Shown piece by piece: positions 2,132 through 31,752 of a DNA stretch of 32,165 nt. Position 1 is the stretch's first letter. The number at the start of each line of letters is the position of its first letter. The stretch is from Octopus bimaculoides. Lineage: Eukaryota. The stretch lies in assembly GCF_001194135.2 (NCBI RefSeq), contig NC_068988.1, forward strand, positions 67,490,647 through 67,522,811, given 5' to 3'. A program made the translations under genes and the position numbers. The notes beneath the pieces are model-generated. The model was not told the origin of the DNA. It worked only from the letters and a program-made list of their open reading frames with translations, and did not search any database.

Positions 2132-2321
2132 NNNNNNNNNNNNNNNNNNNNNNNNNNNNNNNNNNNNNNNNNNNNNNNNNNNNNNNNNNNNNNNNNNNNN
2201 NNNNNNNNNNNNNNNNNNNNNNNNNNNNNNNNNNNNNNNNNNNNNNNNNNNNNNNNNNNNNNNNNNNNNNNNNNNNNNNNNNNNNNNNNNNNNNNNNNNN
2301 NNNNNNNNNNNNNNNNNNNNN
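2132..2321. other. Assembly gap (N run) between (CA)n and (TA)n
   Basis: Run of N flanked by microsatellites. Confidence 0.99.
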
Positions 2322-2648: not shown

Positions 2649-2884
2649 TCTTTAATCTCTTTTACTCTTTTAGTTGTTTCAGTCGTTGCAGTCATTTGAC
2701 TGCGGTCAGGCTGGAGCACCGCCTTTAGTCGAGTAAATCAACTCCAGGAGTTATTCTGTGTAAGCCTAGTACTTATTCTATCGATCTGTTTTGCCGAACC
2801 GCTAAGTTACGGGGACATAAACAAACCAGCATCGGTTGTCAAGCGATGTTGGGGGGACAAACACAGAGAAACAAATACATACAG

Positions 2885-2915
<31 letters not shown>

Positions 2916-3081
2916 TACGACGTGCTTCTTTCAGTTTCCGTCTACCAAATCCATTCACAAGGCTTTGGTCGGCCCGAGGCTATATTAGAAGACACATGCC
3001 CAAGGTGCCAAGCAGTGGGACTAAACCGGGAACCATGTGGCTGGTAAGCAAGTCACTTACCACACAGCCACTCCCGCGGCT
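2647..3081 (-). mobile_element. Near full-length tRNA-derived SINE, family 1 (octopus-type), with internal microsatellite
   Basis: Minus strand has an A-box-like TGGCTGTGTGG (3060-3070) and a B-box-like GGTTTAGTCCC (3017-3027), then a body, an internal (CA/TA) tract at about 2870-2915 and a 3' module ending in AAAGAG-type repeats. The same sequence recurs at 3836-4030, 4658-4749 and 28968-29339. Confidence 0.9.
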
Positions 3082-3835
3082 ATGTGTATATATATATATA
3101 TATATGTGTGTGTATGTGTGTGCGTGGGGGGGGTTTGTATGTATGTATGTATGTATGTATACAAATTACAGTATAGCGAGTTTAAAGTGGTGTACATCTG
3201 TGCCACAGATTAGCGCGTTTATTTATAATATACTATGCAAAACACAACAAATATTCACATTATGGAATGGTTTTCAAATATATCTCCTATAAGGACGCAA
3301 TTTTTTCTCCATTTCATCCTACTTAATCAGATGTTAATTGTTTCTAATAATTTTTTGATTCAGCTGTAACTGATTGTGATATAGTTTTTTTAACAATCTA
3401 TTATCGTTAGGAATATTTTTTATTGTCTGCGCTAAGACAATCCAAAAAAAAAAAGAGAAAAAAAACCCAATACACAGAAGTGTAACGCTTCTGGAGTGCC
3501 CCCTTTAATAGAGATATAGCTAATAAGATGTAAAAAAATCGTTATACTTAATATGAAATCTGCCCTTACTGGTGAATTAAGTGGATTATGTAAAAATGAT
3601 TTGGGTAGTAAATTAAAAGGTTTTAAGTGGTTTAGATCATTTAGAGTTCCTATTATGCTGCAGAGAATTAATGTGAAAACATTGTAGTTATCTAAACAAT
3701 AAGTCAAGCAACTGTATTTAGATTTTTGTTAAATGCATAAATATTTCGTGAGTAGGGAGTATACGATTTAACACTTATCGTCTGCCATGCCTCTTCTTTC
3801 AAAGTAATGCCTAATTCCAAAACAAAGGAAAAATA

Positions 3836-4041
3836 CCCTTTTACATGTTTCAGTCTTTTGACTGTGGCCATGCTGGAGCACCACCTTTTAGTCCAGCAAA
3901 TCGACCCCAGGACTTATTCTTTAGAAGCCTAGTACTTATTATATCGATCTGTTTTGCCGAACCGCTAAGTTACGGGGACATAAACAAACCAGCATCGGTT
4001 GTCAAGCGATGTTGGGGGGACAAACACACACATACAAACAT

Positions 4042-4092
<51 letters not shown>
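3836..4092 (-). mobile_element. SINE family 1, 3' module plus internal microsatellite; head lost in the gap
   Basis: Close match by eye to 2660-2870 (gactgtggccatgctggagcacc...gccgaaccgctaagttacggggac...gcgatgttggggggacaaac). Confidence 0.9.
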
Positions 4093-4624
4093 NNNNNNNN
4101 NNNNNNNNNNNNNNNNNNNNNNNNNNNNNNNNNNNNNNNNNNNNNNNNNNNNNNNNNNNNNNNNNNNNNNNNNNNNNNNNNNNNNNNNNNNNNNNNNNNN
4201 NNNNNNNNNNNNNNNNNNNNNNNNNNNNNNNNNNNNNNNNNNNNNNNNNNNNNNNNNNNNNNNNNNNNNNNNNNNNNNNNNNNNNNNNNNNNNNNNNNNN
4301 NNNNNNNNNNNNNNNNNNNNNNNNNNNNNNNNNNNNNNNNNNNNNNNNNNNNNNNNNNNNNNNNNNNNNNNNNNNNNNNNNNNNNNNNNNNNNNNNNNNN
4401 NNNNNNNNNNNNNNNNNNNNNNNNNNNNNNNNNNNNNNNNNNNNNNNNNNNNNNNNNNNNNNNNNNNNNNNNNNNNNNNNNNNNNNNNNNNNNNNNNNNN
4501 NNNNNNNNNNNNNNNNNNNNNNNNNNNNNNNNNNNNNNNNNNNNNNNNNNNNNNNNNNNNNNNNNNNNNNNNNNNNNNNNNNNNNNNNNNNNNNNNNNNN
4601 NNNNNNNNNNNNNNNNNNNNNNNN
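4093..4624. other. Assembly gap (N run)
   Basis: Run of N flanked by (TA)n. Confidence 0.99.
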
Positions 4625-6745: not shown

Positions 6746-6792
6746 TCATGAATTCATATGAATCAAATGAGGAAATATGTAAGGTATATCAC
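6746..6792 (-). CDS. Candidate terminal coding exon of an unidentified minus-strand gene (GDIPYIFPHLIHMNS*)
   Basis: Acceptor cctctctttttcgttcag| closes a 100-nt GTGAGT...CAG intron (6892-6793), and the phase fits the upstream candidate exon. No homology recognised. Confidence 0.3.
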
Positions 6793-6892
6793 CTGAACGA
6801 AAAAGAGAGGCTCGACATGAATATTCTGTTTAGAGACATGTCTCGATCAATCTGTAACTTAACGTCTAGAAAACAAAAGCAATCCTACTCAC

Positions 6893-17455: not shown

Positions 17456-17886
17456 CTTTTCTACGCTAGGCACAAGGCTCGAATTTTTTGGGGACGTGGC
17501 CAGTCGATTAGATTGGCCCCCAGTACGCAACTGGTATTTAATTTATCGACTTCAAAAGCATAAAAGGCAAAGTCGACCTCGGAAGAATTTGAACTCAGAA
17601 CGTAAAGACAGACGAAATACCGCTAAGTATTTCGCCGGTGTGCTAATGTTTCTTATTTCTTTGTTGCCCACAAAGGGATACACACAGAGGAGACAAAGAA
17701 GGACAGACGAACGGATTAAGTTGATTATATCGACCCTAGTGCGTAACTAGTACTTATTTAATCGACCCCGAAAGGATAAAAGGTAAAGCCGACCTTGGTG
17801 GAATTTGAACTCAGAACGTAGTGGCAAGCGAAATACCGATAAGTATTTAGCCCGGTGTGTTAACGTTTCTGCCAACACGCCGCCTT
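17456..17886 (-). mobile_element. Dimeric tRNA-derived SINE (family 2) with 16-bp target-site duplication
   Basis: Two related monomers (17456-17652 and 17653-17886) share gaatttgaactcagaacgta and the atcgacccc...aaagtcgacct core. Flanked by AACGTTCTAGTTTATT (17440-17455) and AACGTTCCAGTTTATT (17887-17902). Confidence 0.9.
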
Positions 17887-18984: not shown

Positions 18985-18994
18985 NNNNNNNNNN
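18925..18994. repeat. (CA)n microsatellite ending in a 10-N gap
   Basis: Direct reading. Confidence 0.95.
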
Positions 18995-20149
18995 TACATA
19001 CAAACATTTGAATCACATTATAACTAATATAGGCTCATAAAAATACATAAAACGAAGCAATATACGATATTGTAAGATGATTAAGTATGCCCCCTTTAGT
19101 ATGAAGAACCTAGTTACCTGTGGGTTAGCATGTTTCAAGTAGTGGGCTAAAAAATAATGTTTGATTAACTGAAATGATATCCTAAACAAAAAGATAAGGA
19201 AATTAGCTTTAATTATAATTCCCTCGGGGAAGCAAGGGAGAGAACTCAGAAACTTAAATTGAATAAAAGTTATATGGTGACATGCAATGGGAAATTTGTT
19301 TAAACTTTGATGAATACAGTGATTTAACTCAACATATTTGAAATTATATAAAATTACTAAATGATCAATAGAATGAACGTGATAAACTAATTTGCAGTCG
19401 ATTGTTTGATTTATTTGCATTGAATACAATTATTAGCGCATCAGAAACACGGACTTATTACGTGTATTGCTGAAGGCTGTTTATTTATCTAAAGAGAAAA
19501 AATACTCACAACAAAATAAGCCTTATCAAGCTGGAATACAGAGAAAGAAATATCTTTCAATTATTGTCAATATTGACCTATTATCTTCCCAGCTTGTTTT
19601 GCAAAACACGACATATCATACGTTGTAGACGAGATCATCATCAGGTAACATGTGTTTGCTTTATGCCATCGAGTAAACATAAAGTTCATTGTTTGTATTA
19701 GCTAGTCAACGAACAAGAACAAGTAGTATAATTCTAGGCACTTAAACATTGTATTAAAACCCATTTACTGCCATGACAGTTAAATGAGCTGTGCTATACT
19801 TTCCAATCGGTATCTCAGTTTGTTCTATATCTATGTCCCCTGTTATTTGTGCGACTTCGACCAGTCTAGGTACGTTGTGGGTAATGGAAATTTTATCGCA
19901 TAGTTTCGCTAATTTTTAACCATACATGCTCTATTTCTCAGTTTCGTCTCTTTACGGAGATGTCCTATGAGGTGTGGCTTTGGTTTTAACTCTCACTACA
20001 TGTGTTATTTGCTAATCCTATCATGAGTATATGGGGAGCAATAAAAGCTATGTTTCAAATTATCCAGTTATGAAATGTATTAGGTCAAATGAGGCACAAA
20101 CACGAATGAAAAGCAAACACAAACGAGGTACATACAAAACATATTTTTT

Positions 20150-21650: not shown

Positions 21651-21846
21651 GAAAGAAATTCAACGCTTACGGAGAAAAATATTTACAAATATATTTATGT
21701 TTTATAATTTTAGCAGCAAGTTAACTTACACGTCTTCAAAATGACATAATGAAAATTTCAAGAAAAATATGACCAAAATCGTCTCCACAAGTACATCTCT
21801 TCTCAGCAAAAATTCGTTGAACGTTTTATAAAATAAAACGAAGCTT

Positions 21847-21880
21847 ACCTGCAAAAGAAAGAAAAGAGGAATTTAGTCAA
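21847..21880 (-). other. 3' splice site immediately followed by a 5' splice site (candidate recursive splice site)
   Basis: Minus strand reads tgactaaattcctcttttctttcttttgcag|gtaagc, junction at 21849/21848. Confidence 0.5.
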
Positions 21881-21989
21881 AAGACAGACGAAAGTACAAT
21901 TACAAAATATATATGCTTCTAAGAAATTAGGTCATACCTACACACGCTCACATACGCACACATTAGCATATACAAATACGAAACTGTTA

Positions 21990-22372: not shown

Positions 22373-23012
22373 CCACGTTTCAATATGATGTGTATAGGTA
22401 CTTGTTTACTATTTTCAGCTGGTCAGTCCTCCACATAACTGTTCCTTTATAGATTTTTAATTAATTTGTTTTCTGTGTTGCTGTTTACTCCGATTTCAAA
22501 CCAAATGGGACAGATTTATGACGGAAAAAACACCAAGAAAGACAACTCCGTCTTTTCATTTCTATTTATGGCTTCACTAGCTGATTTCTCAACTAATTAT
22601 TTTCAAAGCAATAGGGATCTCAAGCTTCGTCCTTGCTATATTTATAACATTGATTTCTCTGTCGAGATTCCCTTATTTGATCTTATTTAATTAAGCCAGA
22701 CAACGATTTATCTAATGGCGAATATAATCAATGATAATTAATCTTGTGTGAGATTCAAGAATCAAATTTGAAGTTACATACAAGGTTATTGGTAAAACAA
22801 CATACTTGTGAAGACATCTTTATTGGAAACTGCCGATATCACAAGAAACTTAAATCCTTGCTATTTATATGTATATATATATATGAGCATATATGTATGT
22901 GTCTGTGTGCGTTTGCACATACACACTTACAGACATATAATTATATGTATACAGGTATATAAATGTAAATATAAAGAATGTTTTCAAGCACAACGCCAGC
23001 AATATCTAAGAC

Positions 23013-23190
23013 GGGGCTAAGTCGATTACGTCGAACCCTGGATGCAACGGGTATTTATTTTATCAACTCTGAAAGGATGAAAGCTAGAGTTAACCTCTAA
23101 GTGGAATTTGAACTCAGAATCTACAGACAACAAACGAAATGCCGCTAAGTATTGAGTCCCGCGTGCCAACGGTTCTACCAGTTCGCCGCG
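23013..23190 (-). mobile_element. Diverged monomeric SINE, family 2
   Basis: gtggaatttgaactcagaa...gaaatgccgctaagtatt...gccaacggttctaccagttcgccgc matches 17720-17886. Confidence 0.8.
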
Positions 23191-23846: not shown

Positions 23847-24789
23847 NNNNNNNNNNNNNNNNNNNNNNNNNNNNNNNNNNNNNNNNNNNNNNNNNNNNNN
23901 NNNNNNNNNNNNNNNNNNNNNNNNNNNNNNNNNNNNNNNNNNNNNNNNNNNNNNNNNNNNNNNNNNNNNNNNNNNNNNNNNNNNNNNNNNNNNNNNNNNN
24001 NNNNNNNNNNNNNNNNNNNNNNNNNNNNNNNNNNNNNNNNNNNNNNNNNNNNNNNNNNNNNNNNNNNNNNNNNNNNNNNNNNNNNNNNNNNNNNNNNNNN
24101 NNNNNNNNNNNNNNNNNNNNNNNNNNNNNNNNNNNNNNNNNNNNNNNNNNNNNNNNNNNNNNNNNNNNNNNNNNNNNNNNNNNNNNNNNNNNNNNNNNNN
24201 NNNNNNNNNNNNNNNNNNNNNNNNNNNNNNNNNNNNNNNNNNNNNNNNNNNNNNNNNNNNNNNNNNNNNNNNNNNNNNNNNNNNNNNNNNNNNNNNNNNN
24301 NNNNNNNNNNNNNNNNNNNNNNNNNNNNNNNNNNNNNNNNNNNNNNNNNNNNNNNNNNNNNNNNNNNNNNNNNNNNNNNNNNNNNNNNNNNNNNNNNNNN
24401 NNNNNNNNNNNNNNNNNNNNNNNNNNNNNNNNNNNNNNNNNNNNNNNNNNNNNNNNNNNNNNNNNNNNNNNNNNNNNNNNNNNNNNNNNNNNNNNNNNNN
24501 NNNNNNNNNNNNNNNNNNNNNNNNNNNNNNNNNNNNNNNNNNNNNNNNNNNNNNNNNNNNNNNNNNNNNNNNNNNNNNNNNNNNNNNNNNNNNNNNNNNN
24601 NNNNNNNNNNNNNNNNNNNNNNNNNNNNNNNNNNNNNNNNNNNNNNNNNNNNNNNNNNNNNNNNNNNNNNNNNNNNNNNNNNNNNNNNNNNNNNNNNNNN
24701 NNNNNNNNNNNNNNNNNNNNNNNNNNNNNNNNNNNNNNNNNNNNNNNNNNNNNNNNNNNNNNNNNNNNNNNNNNNNNNNNNNNNNNNNN
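23847..24789. other. Assembly gap (N run)
   Basis: Run of N. Confidence 0.99.
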
Positions 24790-25575: not shown

Positions 25576-25739
25576 GTTTTAGTATTATCAATTTTATTTC
25601 TCTTTATCATGGCTGTAGTTATCCTCTCGCTAAAATGGGGCATTTTAAGGAAGAATATGTTGATGGGTTTTCTATGTTGTTCGGCGTGTTGGTCGTCTTG
25701 GATACTTAAGCCGATTTACAATGGATCTAGGATATCCGC

Positions 25740-26490
25740 TGGTTTTCAATATATCTAGGAAGCGTGTAGTGTAGCCATCCGAAGAGCCATAAGAAGAGAA
25801 GGGCTAGACATACAACTAGCCCACTCCCACCCCTCTCTGAGAGGACACCTCTCAAAGAAACGAATAAGGGACAACAATCAATGCATACTAACACACTCTC
25901 CCATTCGTGACACAGATTTATGCCAACGGGTAAATGTTGTGCATAAAATACAATGTAACAAATGCAACAAGTTCTATGTGGGAAGCACAACAAGACCGTT
26001 ACACGTCCGCATCAAAGAACATCTGAACACGAGAACCTCCTCCTTCAGAAAGCATCTAGACAGATGCAGGGGTAATTTAAGAATTAAGGAAGCTTTTCTC
26101 ATACACAGACTAGGACCCCAAATTAACAACAGGATGGAGGTTGGTAATCAATATATTATTTAGCTACATTTGGATGTGTGTAGGTTCATTCTTAATAACA
26201 TGCTCATGTATTGTGTATAACAAAAAAAAAAGAAGGGCAACAAAAAAAGAAAAGCTGCACGTATAACACATAACTTAGAAGCAGCGCTACAGATTTACCA
26301 ACACACACGAGATTGAAACATAGCCGACCTCACGCGCTTCTCATGAGGAATTCCGGAATAGGCTTCGTGAGACCACTACTGAGACGCTTCCGAAAAAAAA
26401 AGAAAACTGTTAGAAAACAGTTTATAGCAGAGACTCCATCTAAGAATATCTGAAGAAGGAATTGTAATTCCGAAATATCATCGGACTATA
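25740..26490 (+). mobile_element. Penelope-like element 3' fragment (linker plus GIY-YIG endonuclease, internally deleted) with its 3' region
   Basis: Stop-free frame 25759-26163: EACSVAIRRAIRREGLDIQLAHSHPSLRGHLSKKRIRDNNQCILTHSPIRDTDLCQRVNVVHKIQCNKCNKFYVGSTTRPLHVRIKEH...LRIKEAFLI...PQIN. This matches the PLE pattern V(Y).I.C..C...Y(I/V)G.T.R.L..R..EH. Confidence 0.88.
26448..26481 (+). ncRNA. Minimal type I hammerhead ribozyme motif (Penelope-associated)
   Basis: CTGAAGA-A-GGAAT-TGTA-ATTCC-GAAA-TAT-C: intact core, 5-bp helix II and palindromic ATAT helix III, with predicted cleavage after C26479. Helix I is only 2 bp. Confidence 0.6.
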
Positions 26491-26581: not shown

Positions 26582-26679
26582 NNNNNNNNNNNNNNNNNNN
26601 NNNNNNNNNNNNNNNNNNNNNNNNNNNNNNNNNNNNNNNNNNNNNNNNNNNNNNNNNNNNNNNNNNNNNNNNNNNNNNN
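26582..26679. other. Assembly gap (N run)
   Basis: Run of N. Confidence 0.99.
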
Positions 26680-28967: not shown

Positions 28968-29339
28968 TACTCTTTTACTTGTTACAATCATTTGACTGTG
29001 ACCATGCTGGAGTACCTCCTTTAGTCGAGCAAATCGACCACAGGACTTATTCTTTGTAAGCCTAGTACTTATTCTATCGGGTTCTTAGGTCGAACCGCTA
29101 AGTTACGGGGACGTAAACACTCTAGCATCAGTTGTCAAGACATGTTGGGGGGTCAAACATAGAAGCACAAACATATACAGACACATACACACACACATAT
29201 ACATACATATATACGACAGGCTTCTTTCAGTTTCCGTCTACCAAATCCACTCACAAAGCTTCAGTCGCCCCGAGGCTATAGTAGAAGACACTTGCCCAAG
29301 GTGCCACGCCGTGGCAGTGAACCCGGAACCATGTGGTTC
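28968..29339 (-). mobile_element. SINE family 1, slightly 5'-truncated
   Basis: Matches 2647-3050 throughout, including the internal microsatellite at about 29160-29215. Confidence 0.9.
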
Positions 29340-29755: not shown

Positions 29756-29788
<33 letters not shown>

Positions 29789-29818
29789 TGTATGTATGTA
29801 TGTATGTATGTATGTATG
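29733..29818. repeat. (TATG)n microsatellite
   Basis: Direct reading. Confidence 0.95.
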
Positions 29819-31115
29819 TCATTGTTCAGTTTTATTTCAAGATTTCTTGCCAATAAAGAAAGTGATGGTTTCTAACCTAGATTCGAGGCTTCTTCATTGG
29901 AATTTCAACATCAAAAACAGGGTATTTTTATTCGTATATATATGAGAAGATTTGTATGTTTTACTTTATGTACGTATTCTCATGCATATAGTTGCATATC
30001 TAAACATGCGCCTATATATTTAAGTGATAAACTTCTGGAAAGTTTTACAGATTTTAACAGTTCCAGTTGATTGGATCTGTAGTCTTCGAATTAGCTTTCT
30101 CCTTTCTACTTTTGAAAAGCCTAATTTATCAAGATTGGTATTTAGGCAGTGTGTTACATATCCCTGGTCCCCAATAATTACAGGTACAAACCTGAATTTG
30201 TAATCTGGATAGGGCAACTCCTGATTTCTCATAGTTCAGCATAGATATTATCTTTTTCAGTGATCTTCAGTTTTATGTTAACATCCGTCGGGTAGCTAAT
30301 TTTCACAACTTTACACAATATCTCTTCTCTATCCCAAATCATTATATCAGGTCTGTTGTGCTTACGTTTTAGTGAGGTCTTCACTGGGATATTCCACCAG
30401 TACTCCCTTTTTTATTATAAGTGGCTATCGCTTCTAACATACTGTGGGTTCTTATTTCTTTGTCCTGGGGGTTATCTTTCCGACGGAATACATAATAAAG
30501 TGTCCTAGCTAGGATATCATGTCTCATCGGTAGATAATACCGTGACGACATTTTAGGATAACTGCCTATGATGTGGGTGTTATCTTCGGTGTCAACTCCA
30601 CAAAGTCTGCATCGGTTGTCACATTTTACTGTTTTTCCTGCTTCTCTATCTCTTTTATGCATTAGGTACTTGGTTGATATCTCTTGTTCCTGGATTACAC
30701 ATGCATACCCTTCAAAATGGGAGGTATTAATCCGGCTATTTGTCCATGATAGACTGCTTTGAGGATCAATATTATTATCACCTTGGTGCTTTCTACAAAT
30801 ATATCAATGCATAATCTTCTCCTCACACAGGCTCATACTTTCATCTGACGTTACGTTGCGGTAGAGTCGTGCGACTTCTTTGGACATGTATTCTAGTTTA
30901 TCAGACAAGGAATGTTACTCAAGGAGCTGCCTTCCAAATCTTATGACGTTATCAGCCTTATGTATGCAAACTTAGTGAAGGGATACACTTTGACACTTGG
31001 TGGTTAGAAGATGTTGCCGAAGGAATATGATACGAGATTCAAAGGCATTTTGGATCGATGTTAAGCCTCTGCTGCCGTGTTTTCGTTTTAGGCAGAGGCG
31101 GTCTATGTCACAGTT
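29819..31115 (-). mobile_element. 5'-truncated R4/Dong-type retrotransposon, copy 1 (post-RT region, CCHC knuckle, REL endonuclease, 3'UTR)
   Basis: DIDRLCLKRKHGSRGL (the RLY.PR..GGRGL motif), CRLCGVDTEDNTHIIGS (CCHC-like), MRHDILA, EYWWNIPVKT..KHNRPDIMIWD and VPVIIG...TVKICKTF. Frameshifted. Confidence 0.88.
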
Positions 31116-31167
31116 TATGTACGTATGTATGTATGTATGTATGTATGTATGTATGTTTGTATGTATG
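31116..31167. repeat. (TATG)n between the two R4/Dong copies
   Basis: Direct reading. Confidence 0.95.
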
Positions 31168-31752
31168 ACATTATTCAGTTTTATTTCAGGATTTCTTGTC
31201 AATAGAGAAAGTCCCAGTTTCTAACCCAGATCTAAGGTTCCTTCACTGGAATTTCAACACCCACTGGGTATTTTTGTATGTTTGTATGTATATGTGCAGA
31301 TTTGTGTTTTGTTTTTATGTATGTATTCTCATGCATATACTTTTATGTCTAGACATTCTCATATATAATTAAATAATAAACATCTTGAAAGTTTTACAGA
31401 TTTTTACAGTTCCACTGTTGGATTGGATTTCTAGTCTTCGAATCAACCATCTGCTTTCTGCTTTTGAGAAGCCTAATTTCTCAAGACTGGTATTCAGGCA
31501 GTGTGTTACGTATCCCAGTGCCTCAATAATTACAGGTATAAACCTGAACTTGTCATCTGGATAGAGTAGCTGTAGATTCCACAATAGTTCAGCGTTGGGT
31601 TGGTTTTTTTTCGCTGACCTTTAGCTCAATCCTAACATCCGGCGGGAAGCTGATTTCCACAACTGTGCACCATTTCTCTTCTCATTCACAAATTACAATG
31701 TCAGGTCTATTATGTTAAACAATTTATTGAGATTTTCACAGGGACGTACATG
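31168..31752 (-). mobile_element. 5'-truncated R4/Dong-type retrotransposon, copy 2 (REL domain plus 3'UTR)
   Basis: DVPVK...RPDIVI...VVEISFPPDV...LWNLQLLYPDDKFRFIPVIIEALG...TVKICKTF. The 3'UTR is homologous to 29819-30020 but visibly diverged. Confidence 0.88.

What the first reader, a model, noticed from the sequence alone, without database searches (positions are those of the whole stretch)
21843..21915. Candidate recursive-splicing ratchet point (zero-length exon) on the minus strand
Seen: the minus strand reads ...attgtactttcgtctgtcttttgactaaattcctcttttctttcttttgcag|gtaagctt. It has a branch-like GACTAAA, a long pure pyrimidine tract, about 65 nt free of AG, a CAG acceptor, and an immediately abutting near-consensus GTAAGC donor. 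Known: this AG|GT architecture defines ratchet points in long Drosophila introns (e.g. Ubx) and recursive sites in long vertebrate neuronal genes. Inference: the site is used to remove a very long octopus intron in steps. I am not aware of recursive splicing being described in cephalopods. It is the best composite site I found on either strand, and it lies in unique rather than repeat sequence.
Basis: partly seen in the sequence, partly recalled or inferred. Interest (0 to 1): 0.72.

Follow-up and report, generated by a model that had tools for sequence, protein, structure and literature searches.

The report
Candidate recursive splice site, unverified
A textbook splice acceptor fused directly to a splice donor sits on the minus strand of this octopus-like DNA and is too good to be a chance match in this window. 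Whether it is really used to remove a long intron in steps could not be tested, because no RNA data or related genomes were available.

Summary
On the minus strand, a branch-like ACTAA (A at -25), a 19-nt pure pyrimidine tract, a 65-nt AG-free zone and CAG are followed at once by GTAAGC (junction 21849|21848). It is the best acceptor of 3,243 AG sites in the window and one of the two best donors. Its composite score is 29.5 bits against 18.2 for the next AGGT. No site reached 29.5 in 146 Mb of Markov-simulated sequence or in 100 shuffles.

It passes every sequence-level criterion of fly ratchet points: TT at -5/-6, branch position, strong regenerated donor, and a downstream donor (GTAAGT, +119) that defines a cryptic, out-of-frame exon.

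The decisive features could not be tested: a minus-strand gene, a long host intron, junction, saw-tooth or lariat reads, and conservation. No annotated exon was found in the window, the putative exon has no protein homologue, and strand-composition signals are inconsistent.

My estimates:
- Real recursive-splicing unit, about 0.4.
- Acceptor of an ordinary or unannotated exon, about 0.25.
- Unused chance motif, about 0.35.

If validated it would be the first recursive splice site in a mollusc, a new member of a known kind.

The parts
21872..21878 (-). Branch-point-like GACTAAA; the likely branch adenosine is at 21873 (-25 from the 3' splice site)
   Evidence: Read directly. It matches 5 of 7 positions of TACTAAC and fits CTRA of the metazoan CTRAY consensus (own knowledge). 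The position lies inside the -36..-21 range of mapped fly ratchet-point branch points. It is a sequence match only; no lariat data.
21853..21871 (-). 19-nt uninterrupted pyrimidine tract TTCCTCTTTTCTTTCTTTT, with TT at -5/-6
   Evidence: It is one of 25 tracts with at least 18 of 20 pyrimidines in the window. TT at -5/-6 is found in 196 of 197 fly ratchet points.
21851..21915 (-). 65-nt AG exclusion zone upstream of the acceptor AG (the tract and branch site lie inside it)
   Evidence: The nearest upstream AG is at 21917-21916. The AG frequency in the window is 0.053 per position, so 65 AG-free positions have about a 3% chance. This is partly explained by the pyrimidine tract.
21849..21851 (-). 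3' splice site CAG
   Evidence: Acceptor score 17.1 bits, the best of 3,243 AG sites in the window on both strands.
21843..21848 (-). Abutting 5' splice site GTAAGC (the regenerated 'ratchet' donor)
   Evidence: CAG|GTAAGC scores 12.4 bits, in the top 2 of 3,495 GT sites. It has 8 contiguous potential base pairs with the U1 snRNA 5' end, -3 to +5 (own knowledge of U1 pairing).
21730..21848 (-). Putative cryptic recursive-splicing exon (or ordinary exon), 119 nt
   Evidence: It is bounded by the acceptor and the next good donor. It is the top-scoring acceptor-donor pair with an open frame in the whole window. Frame 0 is open (39 codons); frames 1 and 2 have stops. The length is not a multiple of 3. 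G+C is 30% and the composition is T-rich and intron-like. No protein homologue.
21724..21729 (-). Downstream donor CGT|GTAAGT, the candidate donor of the cryptic exon
   Evidence: 6.9 bits, at +119 from the junction. Only 11% of AG sites in the window have a donor this good within 119 nt, and 9.5% have a donor within 200 nt plus an open frame.
21665..21670 (-). Second downstream donor-like TCC|GTAAGC at +178
   Evidence: 4.3 bits. This makes three GTAAG within 180 nt on one strand, where about 0.17 further copies are expected from the minus-strand density of 29 per 30.4 kb.

Best explanation
The site is a genuine exon-definition unit on the minus strand that works as a recursive splice site.

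Proposed mechanism:
1. U2AF and U2 recognise the very strong branch, pyrimidine tract and CAG. U1 binds the GTAAGT 119 nt downstream. Together they define a short cryptic exon (21848-21730).
2. An upstream exon is ligated to G21848. This removes the first part of a long intron and rebuilds a strong donor (exon end + GTAAGC).
3. The rebuilt donor out-competes the weaker downstream donor. The 119-nt cryptic exon and the rest of the intron are then removed in a second step, and nothing remains in the mRNA.

Shown: the sequence elements, their ranks and their improbability by chance. Inferred: transcription of the minus strand, the host intron, and every splicing step.
For: - The composite is far above chance for this window: 29.5 bits against 18.2 for the next site. 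None reached it in 146 Mb of simulation or in 100 shuffles.
- It meets the fly ratchet-point sequence criteria. These are juxtaposed AG|GT, a prominent pyrimidine tract, TT at -5/-6, and a branch A in the -36..-21 range.
- A downstream donor gives a cryptic exon, as the current model requires. Its 119-nt length is out of frame and its composition is intron-like, as described for cryptic recursive exons.
- The regenerated donor (12.4 bits with a CAG exon end, about 8 with a neutral one) is at least as strong as the downstream donor (6.9 bits). The donor-competition rule then predicts skipping.
- The exon has no protein homologue among 5.8 billion proteins, a set that includes Octopus bimaculoides UniRef entries. 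This argues against an annotated coding exon.
- In every invertebrate tested by Shepard et al. 2009, ratchet-type motifs are 4 to more than 20 times denser in large introns than on the complementary strand. That includes a sea urchin (8.2 times). So such motifs are usually selected in invertebrates.
Against: - There is no evidence that the minus strand is transcribed or that the site lies in an intron. No exon of any annotated protein was found among 21 ORFs near the site or among the longest ORFs in the window.
- Strand signals are not consistent with one long minus-strand intron spanning the window. T exceeds A on the minus strand only at 16-24 kb and the skew flips elsewhere. Poly(A)-signal hexamers are symmetric, 61 against 58.
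- The donor has C, not T, at +6.
- The cryptic exon is longer than the roughly 50 nt typical in flies.
- Vertebrates show little enrichment of such motifs. Octopus-like genomes are repeat-rich like vertebrates, so the prevalence of dedicated sites in cephalopods is unknown.
- Tens to about a hundred chance sites of this quality are expected genome-wide.
- Conservation could not be tested.
- The weight matrices were approximated from memory, not trained on octopus.
Confidence: 0.4

Rival explanations
1. It is the acceptor of an ordinary expressed exon that merely happens to start with GTAAGC. This would be an unannotated coding, UTR, lncRNA or alternative ('poison') exon of 119 nt (or 178 nt). 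The exon is kept in at least some mature transcripts.
For: - It is the best acceptor in the window, and a consensus-like donor follows 119 nt later.
- One reading frame is open across the whole 119 nt, ending exactly at the donor.
- Purine-rich GAGAAGAG and GAAGAC motifs inside it resemble exonic enhancers (sequence; own knowledge).
- About 0.3% of exons would start with GTAAG by composition alone (own estimate).
Against: - The 48-aa ORF shares no words with any of 5.8 billion proteins, a set that includes Octopus bimaculoides UniRef entries.
- G+C is 30%, and the peptide is rich in F, L and I. This is what translating T-rich non-coding DNA gives.
- An open frame plus a donor is found after 9.5% of all AG sites in the window.
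- A length of 119 nt would shift the frame if it were a cassette exon.
- After ligation the exon's own 5' end would be a strong donor. Re-splicing would be expected unless it is repressed.
Confidence: 0.25
2. It is a chance, non-functional motif. A (CTTT)n-like microsatellite remnant in microsatellite-rich DNA happens to be followed by CAGGTAAG. It lies in untranscribed DNA or on the antisense strand of a gene, and is at most an occasional cryptic site.
For: - The window is full of tetranucleotide microsatellites and holds 25 strong pyrimidine tracts.
- The tract itself reads like degenerate (CTTT)n, and microsatellite-like sequence starts about 100 nt upstream.
- Tens to about a hundred such sites are expected by chance in a genome of gigabase size (plus own extrapolation).
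- There is no gene, exon, transcript or conservation evidence.
- No strand-consistent composition signal and no unusual RNA structure (z = -0.23).
- The first stage picked the best site it could find, which is a selection effect.
Against: - The per-window chance is only about 1e-4 to 1e-3.
- Every extra criterion that was not used to pick the site also fits: TT at -5/-6, branch position, the 65-nt AG-free zone, a downstream GTAAGT, and a further GTAAGC.
- The downstream donor plus open frame alone has about a 10% chance.
Confidence: 0.35

Closest known systems
Drosophila intronic ratchet points (Ubx, kuz, Bx, luna; Hatton 1998, Burnette 2005, Duff 2015, Joseph 2018/2021, Pai 2018)
   Same: [quoted passage not shown]
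- An unusually strong pyrimidine tract with TT at -5/-6.
- A branch site about 25-30 nt upstream.
- A GTAAG-type regenerated donor.
- A downstream donor that defines a short, out-of-frame cryptic exon.
- A regenerated donor that is stronger than the cryptic-exon donor.

   Different: - A different phylum.
- The donor is GTAAGC rather than GTAAGT.
- The candidate cryptic exon is 119 nt against about 50 nt in flies.
- None of the defining functional evidence is available here: a host intron over 11 kb, saw-tooth coverage, junction and lariat reads, ultraconservation.
Vertebrate recursive splice sites and RS-exons in long neuronal genes (Sibley 2015; Blazquez 2018)
   Same: A YAG|GT site followed by a recursive-splicing exon. 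Competition between the regenerated donor and a downstream donor decides whether that exon is included. Inclusion would disrupt the reading frame.
   Different: Vertebrate sites have weaker motifs and show little sense-strand enrichment. They were defined from brain total RNA and mostly lie in first introns of very long genes. The host gene here is unknown.
Computationally predicted RP-sites in large introns of other invertebrates (Shepard, McCreary & Fedorov 2009)
   Same: It is a motif-only prediction of the same kind. In sea urchin, bee, beetle, mosquito and fly, such motifs are 4 to more than 20 times enriched on the sense strand of introns over 50 kb.
   Different: That study covered no mollusc, and it used known intron coordinates and orientation. 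Here the orientation relative to a gene is unknown, so the enrichment argument applies only conditionally.
Cryptic pseudoexons and poison exons in long introns (for example DMD pseudoexons)
   Same: A strong intronic acceptor plus a downstream donor flank a short, non-conserved, frame-disrupting segment.
   Different: Pseudoexons do not usually begin with a consensus donor. The abutting GTAAGC is what sets this site apart.

Membership tests
Drosophila-type intronic ratchet point (recursive splice site) | [quoted passage not shown] | tested here: met
   ttttgcag|gtaagc at 21849|21848 on the minus strand. It is the best composite of 174 AGGT sites.
Drosophila-type intronic ratchet point (recursive splice site) | More prominent pyrimidine tract than ordinary introns, with TT at -5/-6 (99.5% of fly sites) | tested here: met
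   A 19-nt pure pyrimidine tract, with T at both -5 and -6.
Drosophila-type intronic ratchet point (recursive splice site) | Branch point 21-36 nt upstream, usually an A | tested here: inconclusive
   ACTAA has an A at -25, which fits the range. This is a sequence match only; no lariat reads could be examined.
Drosophila-type intronic ratchet point (recursive splice site) | Strong regenerated donor that out-competes the donor of the cryptic exon | tested here: met
   CAG|GTAAGC scores 12.4 bits against 6.9 bits for CGT|GTAAGT, using rough matrices. The real upstream exon end is unknown.
Drosophila-type intronic ratchet point (recursive splice site) | Cryptic recursive-splicing exon: a short, poorly conserved, usually out-of-frame segment closed by a downstream donor | tested here: met
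   GTAAGT at +119 gives a 119-nt segment whose length is not a multiple of 3 and whose composition is intron-like. It is longer than the roughly 50 nt typical in flies. Conservation was not testable.
Drosophila-type intronic ratchet point (recursive splice site) | Located on the sense strand inside a long intron (over about 10 kb); segments of about 2.6-64 kb | tested here: inconclusive
   No annotated exon was found in the window on either strand, and no gene is on record for a nearby ORF. Strand skews are inconsistent. This is compatible with a very long intron and equally with intergenic DNA.
Drosophila-type intronic ratchet point (recursive splice site) | Junction reads from the upstream exon to the site, saw-tooth read density, and lariats to and from the site | not testable with these tools
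Drosophila-type intronic ratchet point (recursive splice site) | Sharp evolutionary conservation of the AG|GT core in related species | not testable with these tools
   No cephalopod genome is in the searchable collections. Metagenome scans gave no exact match and two motif-only matches of 20-29 nt.
Ordinary coding exon | An open reading frame across the exon that is part of a known or predicted protein | tested here: not met
   Frame 0 is open, but no protein shares even three 5-residue words with it. The database does contain Octopus bimaculoides proteins.
Ordinary coding exon | Presence in mature mRNA | not testable with these tools
   No transcript data.
Transposon-derived cryptic acceptor (antisense retroposon tail, as in Alu exonisation) | The pyrimidine tract is the complement of a retroposon's purine or A-rich tail, with target-site duplications or other copies | tested here: not met
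   There is no other copy in the window and no flanking direct repeats. ORFs around the site have no transposon protein homologues. Genome-wide copy number was not testable.
Known structured RNA (for example a U1 snRNA gene on the plus strand, which reads CTTACCTG) | Match to an Rfam covariance model | tested here: not met
   No Rfam family reaches its gathering score anywhere in the window. The local fold is no better than shuffles.

The most novel reading that the evidence does not exclude
Dedicated recursive splice sites of the fly type (strong AG|GTAAG with a skipped cryptic exon) operate in cephalopods, and this is one of them. That would extend ratchet-point splicing to Lophotrochozoa. 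It would suggest the mechanism is either ancestral to bilaterians or is recruited repeatedly wherever introns become very long, including in the large neuronal genes of octopus.
Probability: 0.35. Interest if true: 0.6.

Novelty: new member of a known kind. Interest (0 to 1): 0.38.

Why it matters
Recursive splicing has been shown experimentally in Drosophila and vertebrates, and inferred from motif enrichment in a few other invertebrates. The open-access literature I searched holds no report for any mollusc.

Cephalopods combine very large, repeat-rich genomes and long introns with an elaborate nervous system. That is the setting in which recursive splicing matters in flies and mammals.

A validated site would show that the mechanism exists in a third major bilaterian branch. 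It would also give a concrete locus for testing whether octopus handles long introns in the fly way (dedicated, conserved sites) or the vertebrate way (few or stochastic sites).

On its own, a single motif-level candidate is a lead, not a discovery.

Tried and rejected
1. **Protein homology of the 48-aa ORF that continues from the acceptor.** Nothing was found.
2. **Twenty further ORFs searched as one query.** These were all ORFs of at least 45 aa within about 3 kb of the site, plus the longest unique ORFs in the window. The aim was to find an annotated exon or a contig from a related genome. Nothing scored E <= 0.01.
3. **Exact look-up of the 138-aa ORF at 19013-19429(-).** It is not on record. 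So there was no route to orthologous loci.
4. **Transposon ORFs searched to identify the taxon or source contig.** The hits were only RVT_1 proteins at 38-55% identity and one Octopus bimaculoides GIY-YIG protein at 69%. A look-up of P0005 returned an unrelated 2.67-Mb ENA contig, which I did not use as background.
5. **Rfam scan.** No family matched, which also excludes a U1-like gene on the plus strand.
6. **Metagenome scans for the junction.** There was no exact match. Two hits to a degenerate pattern matched only the 20-29-nt motif.
7. **RNA folding of 21720-21915(-).** It is no more stable than shuffles, z = -0.23. An 8-bp AT-rich hairpin just after the donor is unremarkable.
8. **Retroposon-tail origin of the pyrimidine tract.** There are no target-site duplications and no second copy.
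9. **Inferring the transcribed strand from composition.** I tried A/T and G/C skew, poly(A)-signal hexamers and GTAAG counts. The result is inconsistent along the window.
10. **Six-frame Pfam scan by DNA reference.** I did not repeat it with pasted ORFs, since short exons are poorly detected by Pfam. An earlier Pfam scan of ten long ORFs gave only weak GIY-YIG, zf-RVT and DUF4722 hits, all below the curated cut-offs.
11. **By-eye reading of 14.3-16.4 kb(+) as a degenerate LINE reverse transcriptase.** No search confirmed it, so I do not claim it.

Full report
**What is there.**
- The acceptor AG is at 21850-21849 and the abutting GT at 21848-21847.
- Upstream lie a G at -4 and a 19-nt uninterrupted pyrimidine tract at 21871-21853, with TT at -5/-6.
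- Further upstream is the branch-like GACTAAA at 21878-21872. Its second A of CTAA is at 21873, position -25.
- No AG occurs for 65 nt; the nearest is at 21917-21916.
- Downstream the donor reads GTAAGC.

**Is it more than chance?** I scored every AG and GT on both strands with rough metazoan weight matrices. I wrote these from memory, so they are approximations and are not octopus-trained.
- The acceptor (17.1 bits) is the best of 3,243 AG sites; the next scores 13.8.
- The donor (12.4 bits) is one of only two at that level among 3,495 GT sites.
- The composite (29.5 bits) stands far above the next of 174 AGGT sites, which scores 18.2.
- In order-3 Markov simulations trained on the window, the mean best composite per window was 17.4. 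No site reached 29.5 in 300 windows or in a further 146 Mb. There, 195 sites scored at least 22, 15 at least 25, and 4 at least 27.
- A matrix-free check gives the same answer. YYYYYYYYYYTTNYAGGTRAG matches once in the window and never in 100 dinucleotide-preserving shuffles.
- Microsatellites could inflate pyrimidine tracts, so I also counted real tracts. There are 25 with at least 18 of 20 pyrimidines. Multiplying by four offsets and the composition probability of CAGGTAAG gives about 1e-3.
- Overall the chance expectation is about 1e-4 to 1e-3 per window. For a genome of about 2.7 Gb (my own knowledge of O. bimaculoides), that still allows tens to about a hundred chance sites.

**The thing itself and its surroundings.**
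- Downstream on the same strand the next good donor is CGT|GTAAGT at 21729 (+119, 6.9 bits). A weaker TCC|GTAAGC follows at 21670 (+178).
- The acceptor and the +119 donor form the best-scoring acceptor-donor pair with an open frame anywhere in the window.
- The 119-nt segment (21848-21730) is open in one frame (39 codons) and closed in the other two. It is 30% G+C and T-rich, like its flanks, and its length is not a multiple of three.
- A donor this good within 119 nt follows 11% of all AG sites in the window. A donor plus an open frame follows 9.5%. So this adds only modest support.
- The ORF that runs through the segment has no homologue among 5.8 billion proteins.
- Twenty other ORFs, covering everything of at least 45 aa within about 3 kb plus the longest unique ORFs, have none either.
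- The region is not repeated in the window and has no flanking target-site duplications.
- It matches no Rfam family and folds no better than shuffled sequence (z = -0.23).

**Context.** The window is AT-rich (about 33% G+C) and full of tetranucleotide microsatellites, assembly gaps and interspersed repeats.
- The only taxon clue is a Penelope-like GIY-YIG ORF at 25774-26160(+). It is 69% identical to a UniRef protein of Octopus bimaculoides. An octopod origin is therefore plausible but not proven.
- That hit also shows the protein database contains octopus proteins, which gives the negative exon searches some weight.
- I found no evidence for a gene on either strand.
- Composition gives no consistent direction of transcription. 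T exceeds A on the minus strand at 16-24 kb, but the skew reverses at 8-12 kb and 28-32 kb. Poly(A)-signal hexamers are symmetric (61 on minus, 58 on plus). GTAAG is somewhat commoner on the minus strand (29 against 16, p = 0.07).
- This picture fits either a very long intron or intergenic DNA.

- TT at -5/-6 occurs in 196 of 197 sites, and branch points lie at -36 to -21.
- Host introns span 11-133 kb, with segments of 2.6-64 kb and sharp conservation.
- Joseph and Lai show that the 'zero-nucleotide exon' is really a short cryptic exon of about 50 nt. It is poorly conserved, generally out of frame, and closed by a downstream donor.
- That exon is skipped because the regenerated donor is the stronger of the two.

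The present site meets all of these sequence-level criteria. It differs only in the +6 base of the donor and in a longer candidate exon. The vertebrate model has the same logic.

Shepard et al. found ratchet-type motifs 4 to more than 20 times denser in large introns than on the complementary strand in fly, mosquito, beetle, bee and sea urchin. In eight vertebrates the ratio was only 0.9-1.5. No mollusc was included. I found no open-access paper that reports recursive splicing in cephalopods, octopus or molluscs.

**Weighing the explanations.** Three readings remain.
- (a) A working recursive-splicing unit.
- (b) The acceptor of an ordinary, unannotated exon that happens to begin with GTAAGC.
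- (c) An unused chance motif.

Genome-wide, I expect roughly 10-100 chance sites of this quality, and about a tenth of them would also have a downstream donor and an open frame. I expect a few dozen real exons with so strong an acceptor and a GTAAG start. That number is reduced further because the segment looks non-coding and is absent from protein databases.

The number of true recursive sites could be anywhere from very few (vertebrate-like) to hundreds (invertebrate-like). That last unknown dominates. I put (a) at about 0.4, (b) at 0.25 and (c) at 0.35.

Readings (a) and (b) shade into each other. Any transcribed exon with this 5' end regenerates a strong donor, so it is liable to re-splicing unless that is repressed.

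**What could not be done.** No RNA-seq data, cephalopod genomes or annotation were accessible.
- A metagenome scan for the junction found no exact match, and the degenerate pattern found only two motif-length coincidences.
- Look-ups of window ORFs led to no related contig.
- The decisive tests are therefore left as next steps: host-gene annotation, nascent-RNA junction, saw-tooth and lariat reads, cDNA inclusion, cross-species alignment, and genome-wide sense/antisense enrichment.

**Verdict.** If true, it is a new member of a known kind in a phylum where that kind has not been reported.

Noticed in passing
window 6788-6808 (-), junction at 6793|6792: A second, weaker ratchet-like site lies on the same strand 15 kb downstream: tctctttttcgttcag|gtgata. 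It has 2 mismatches to the pattern, which is expected 0.13 times per shuffle. Its composite of 18.2 bits is within the chance range, the donor is weak (T at +5), and there is G rather than T at -6.
   Followed up: partly
window 25587-26160 (+): A fragment of a Penelope-like element. Its GIY-YIG ORF is 69% identical to an Octopus bimaculoides UniRef protein (A0A0L8GYC4). This is the only direct clue to the organism.
   Followed up: partly
window 30029-31115 (-) and 31372-31714 (-): The C-terminal part of a non-LTR retrotransposon reverse transcriptase, with frameshifts, is 38-55% identical to RVT_1 proteins. A partial second copy follows. At the DNA level, 29767-30389 and 31116-31744 are 80% identical direct repeats.
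   Followed up: partly
window 2677-3040, 3834-4080, 28968-29336 (+): Three copies of a SINE-like dispersed repeat of about 250-360 nt, 84-88% identical and all in the same orientation. Two of them run into microsatellites and assembly gaps.
   Followed up: no
window 17493-17653, 17719-17870, 23010-23189: Another repeat family of about 150-170 nt at 73-80% identity. Two copies are in tandem at 17.5-17.9 kb, inside a 162-aa ORF that has no homologue. A third copy lies 1.2 kb upstream of the site on the minus strand.
   Followed up: no
whole window: Donor-like motifs are asymmetric between strands. GTAAG occurs 29 times on minus and 16 on plus (p = 0.07); GTRAGT 15 against 6. Poly(A)-signal hexamers are symmetric (61 against 58). 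The A/T skew changes sign three times along the window.
   Followed up: partly
window 19016-19429 (-): A 138-codon open frame, unusually long for 33% G+C DNA (about 0.1 expected per window). It has no protein homologue and no gene on record. It contains an internal AG|GTAACT site at 19117.
   Followed up: partly
window 2132-2321, 4093-4624, 18985-18994, 23847-24789, 26582-26679: Five runs of N (assembly gaps, 1,773 bases in all), mostly flanked by (TA)n, (CATA)n or (GT)n-type microsatellites. The sequence is from a draft assembly.
   Followed up: no
window 21821-21839 (-): A perfect 8-bp AT-rich inverted repeat with a 3-nt loop (CGTTTTAT-TTT-ATAAAACG) starts 10 nt into the putative exon, just after the GTAAGC donor. 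The region as a whole folds no better than shuffles.
   Followed up: yes
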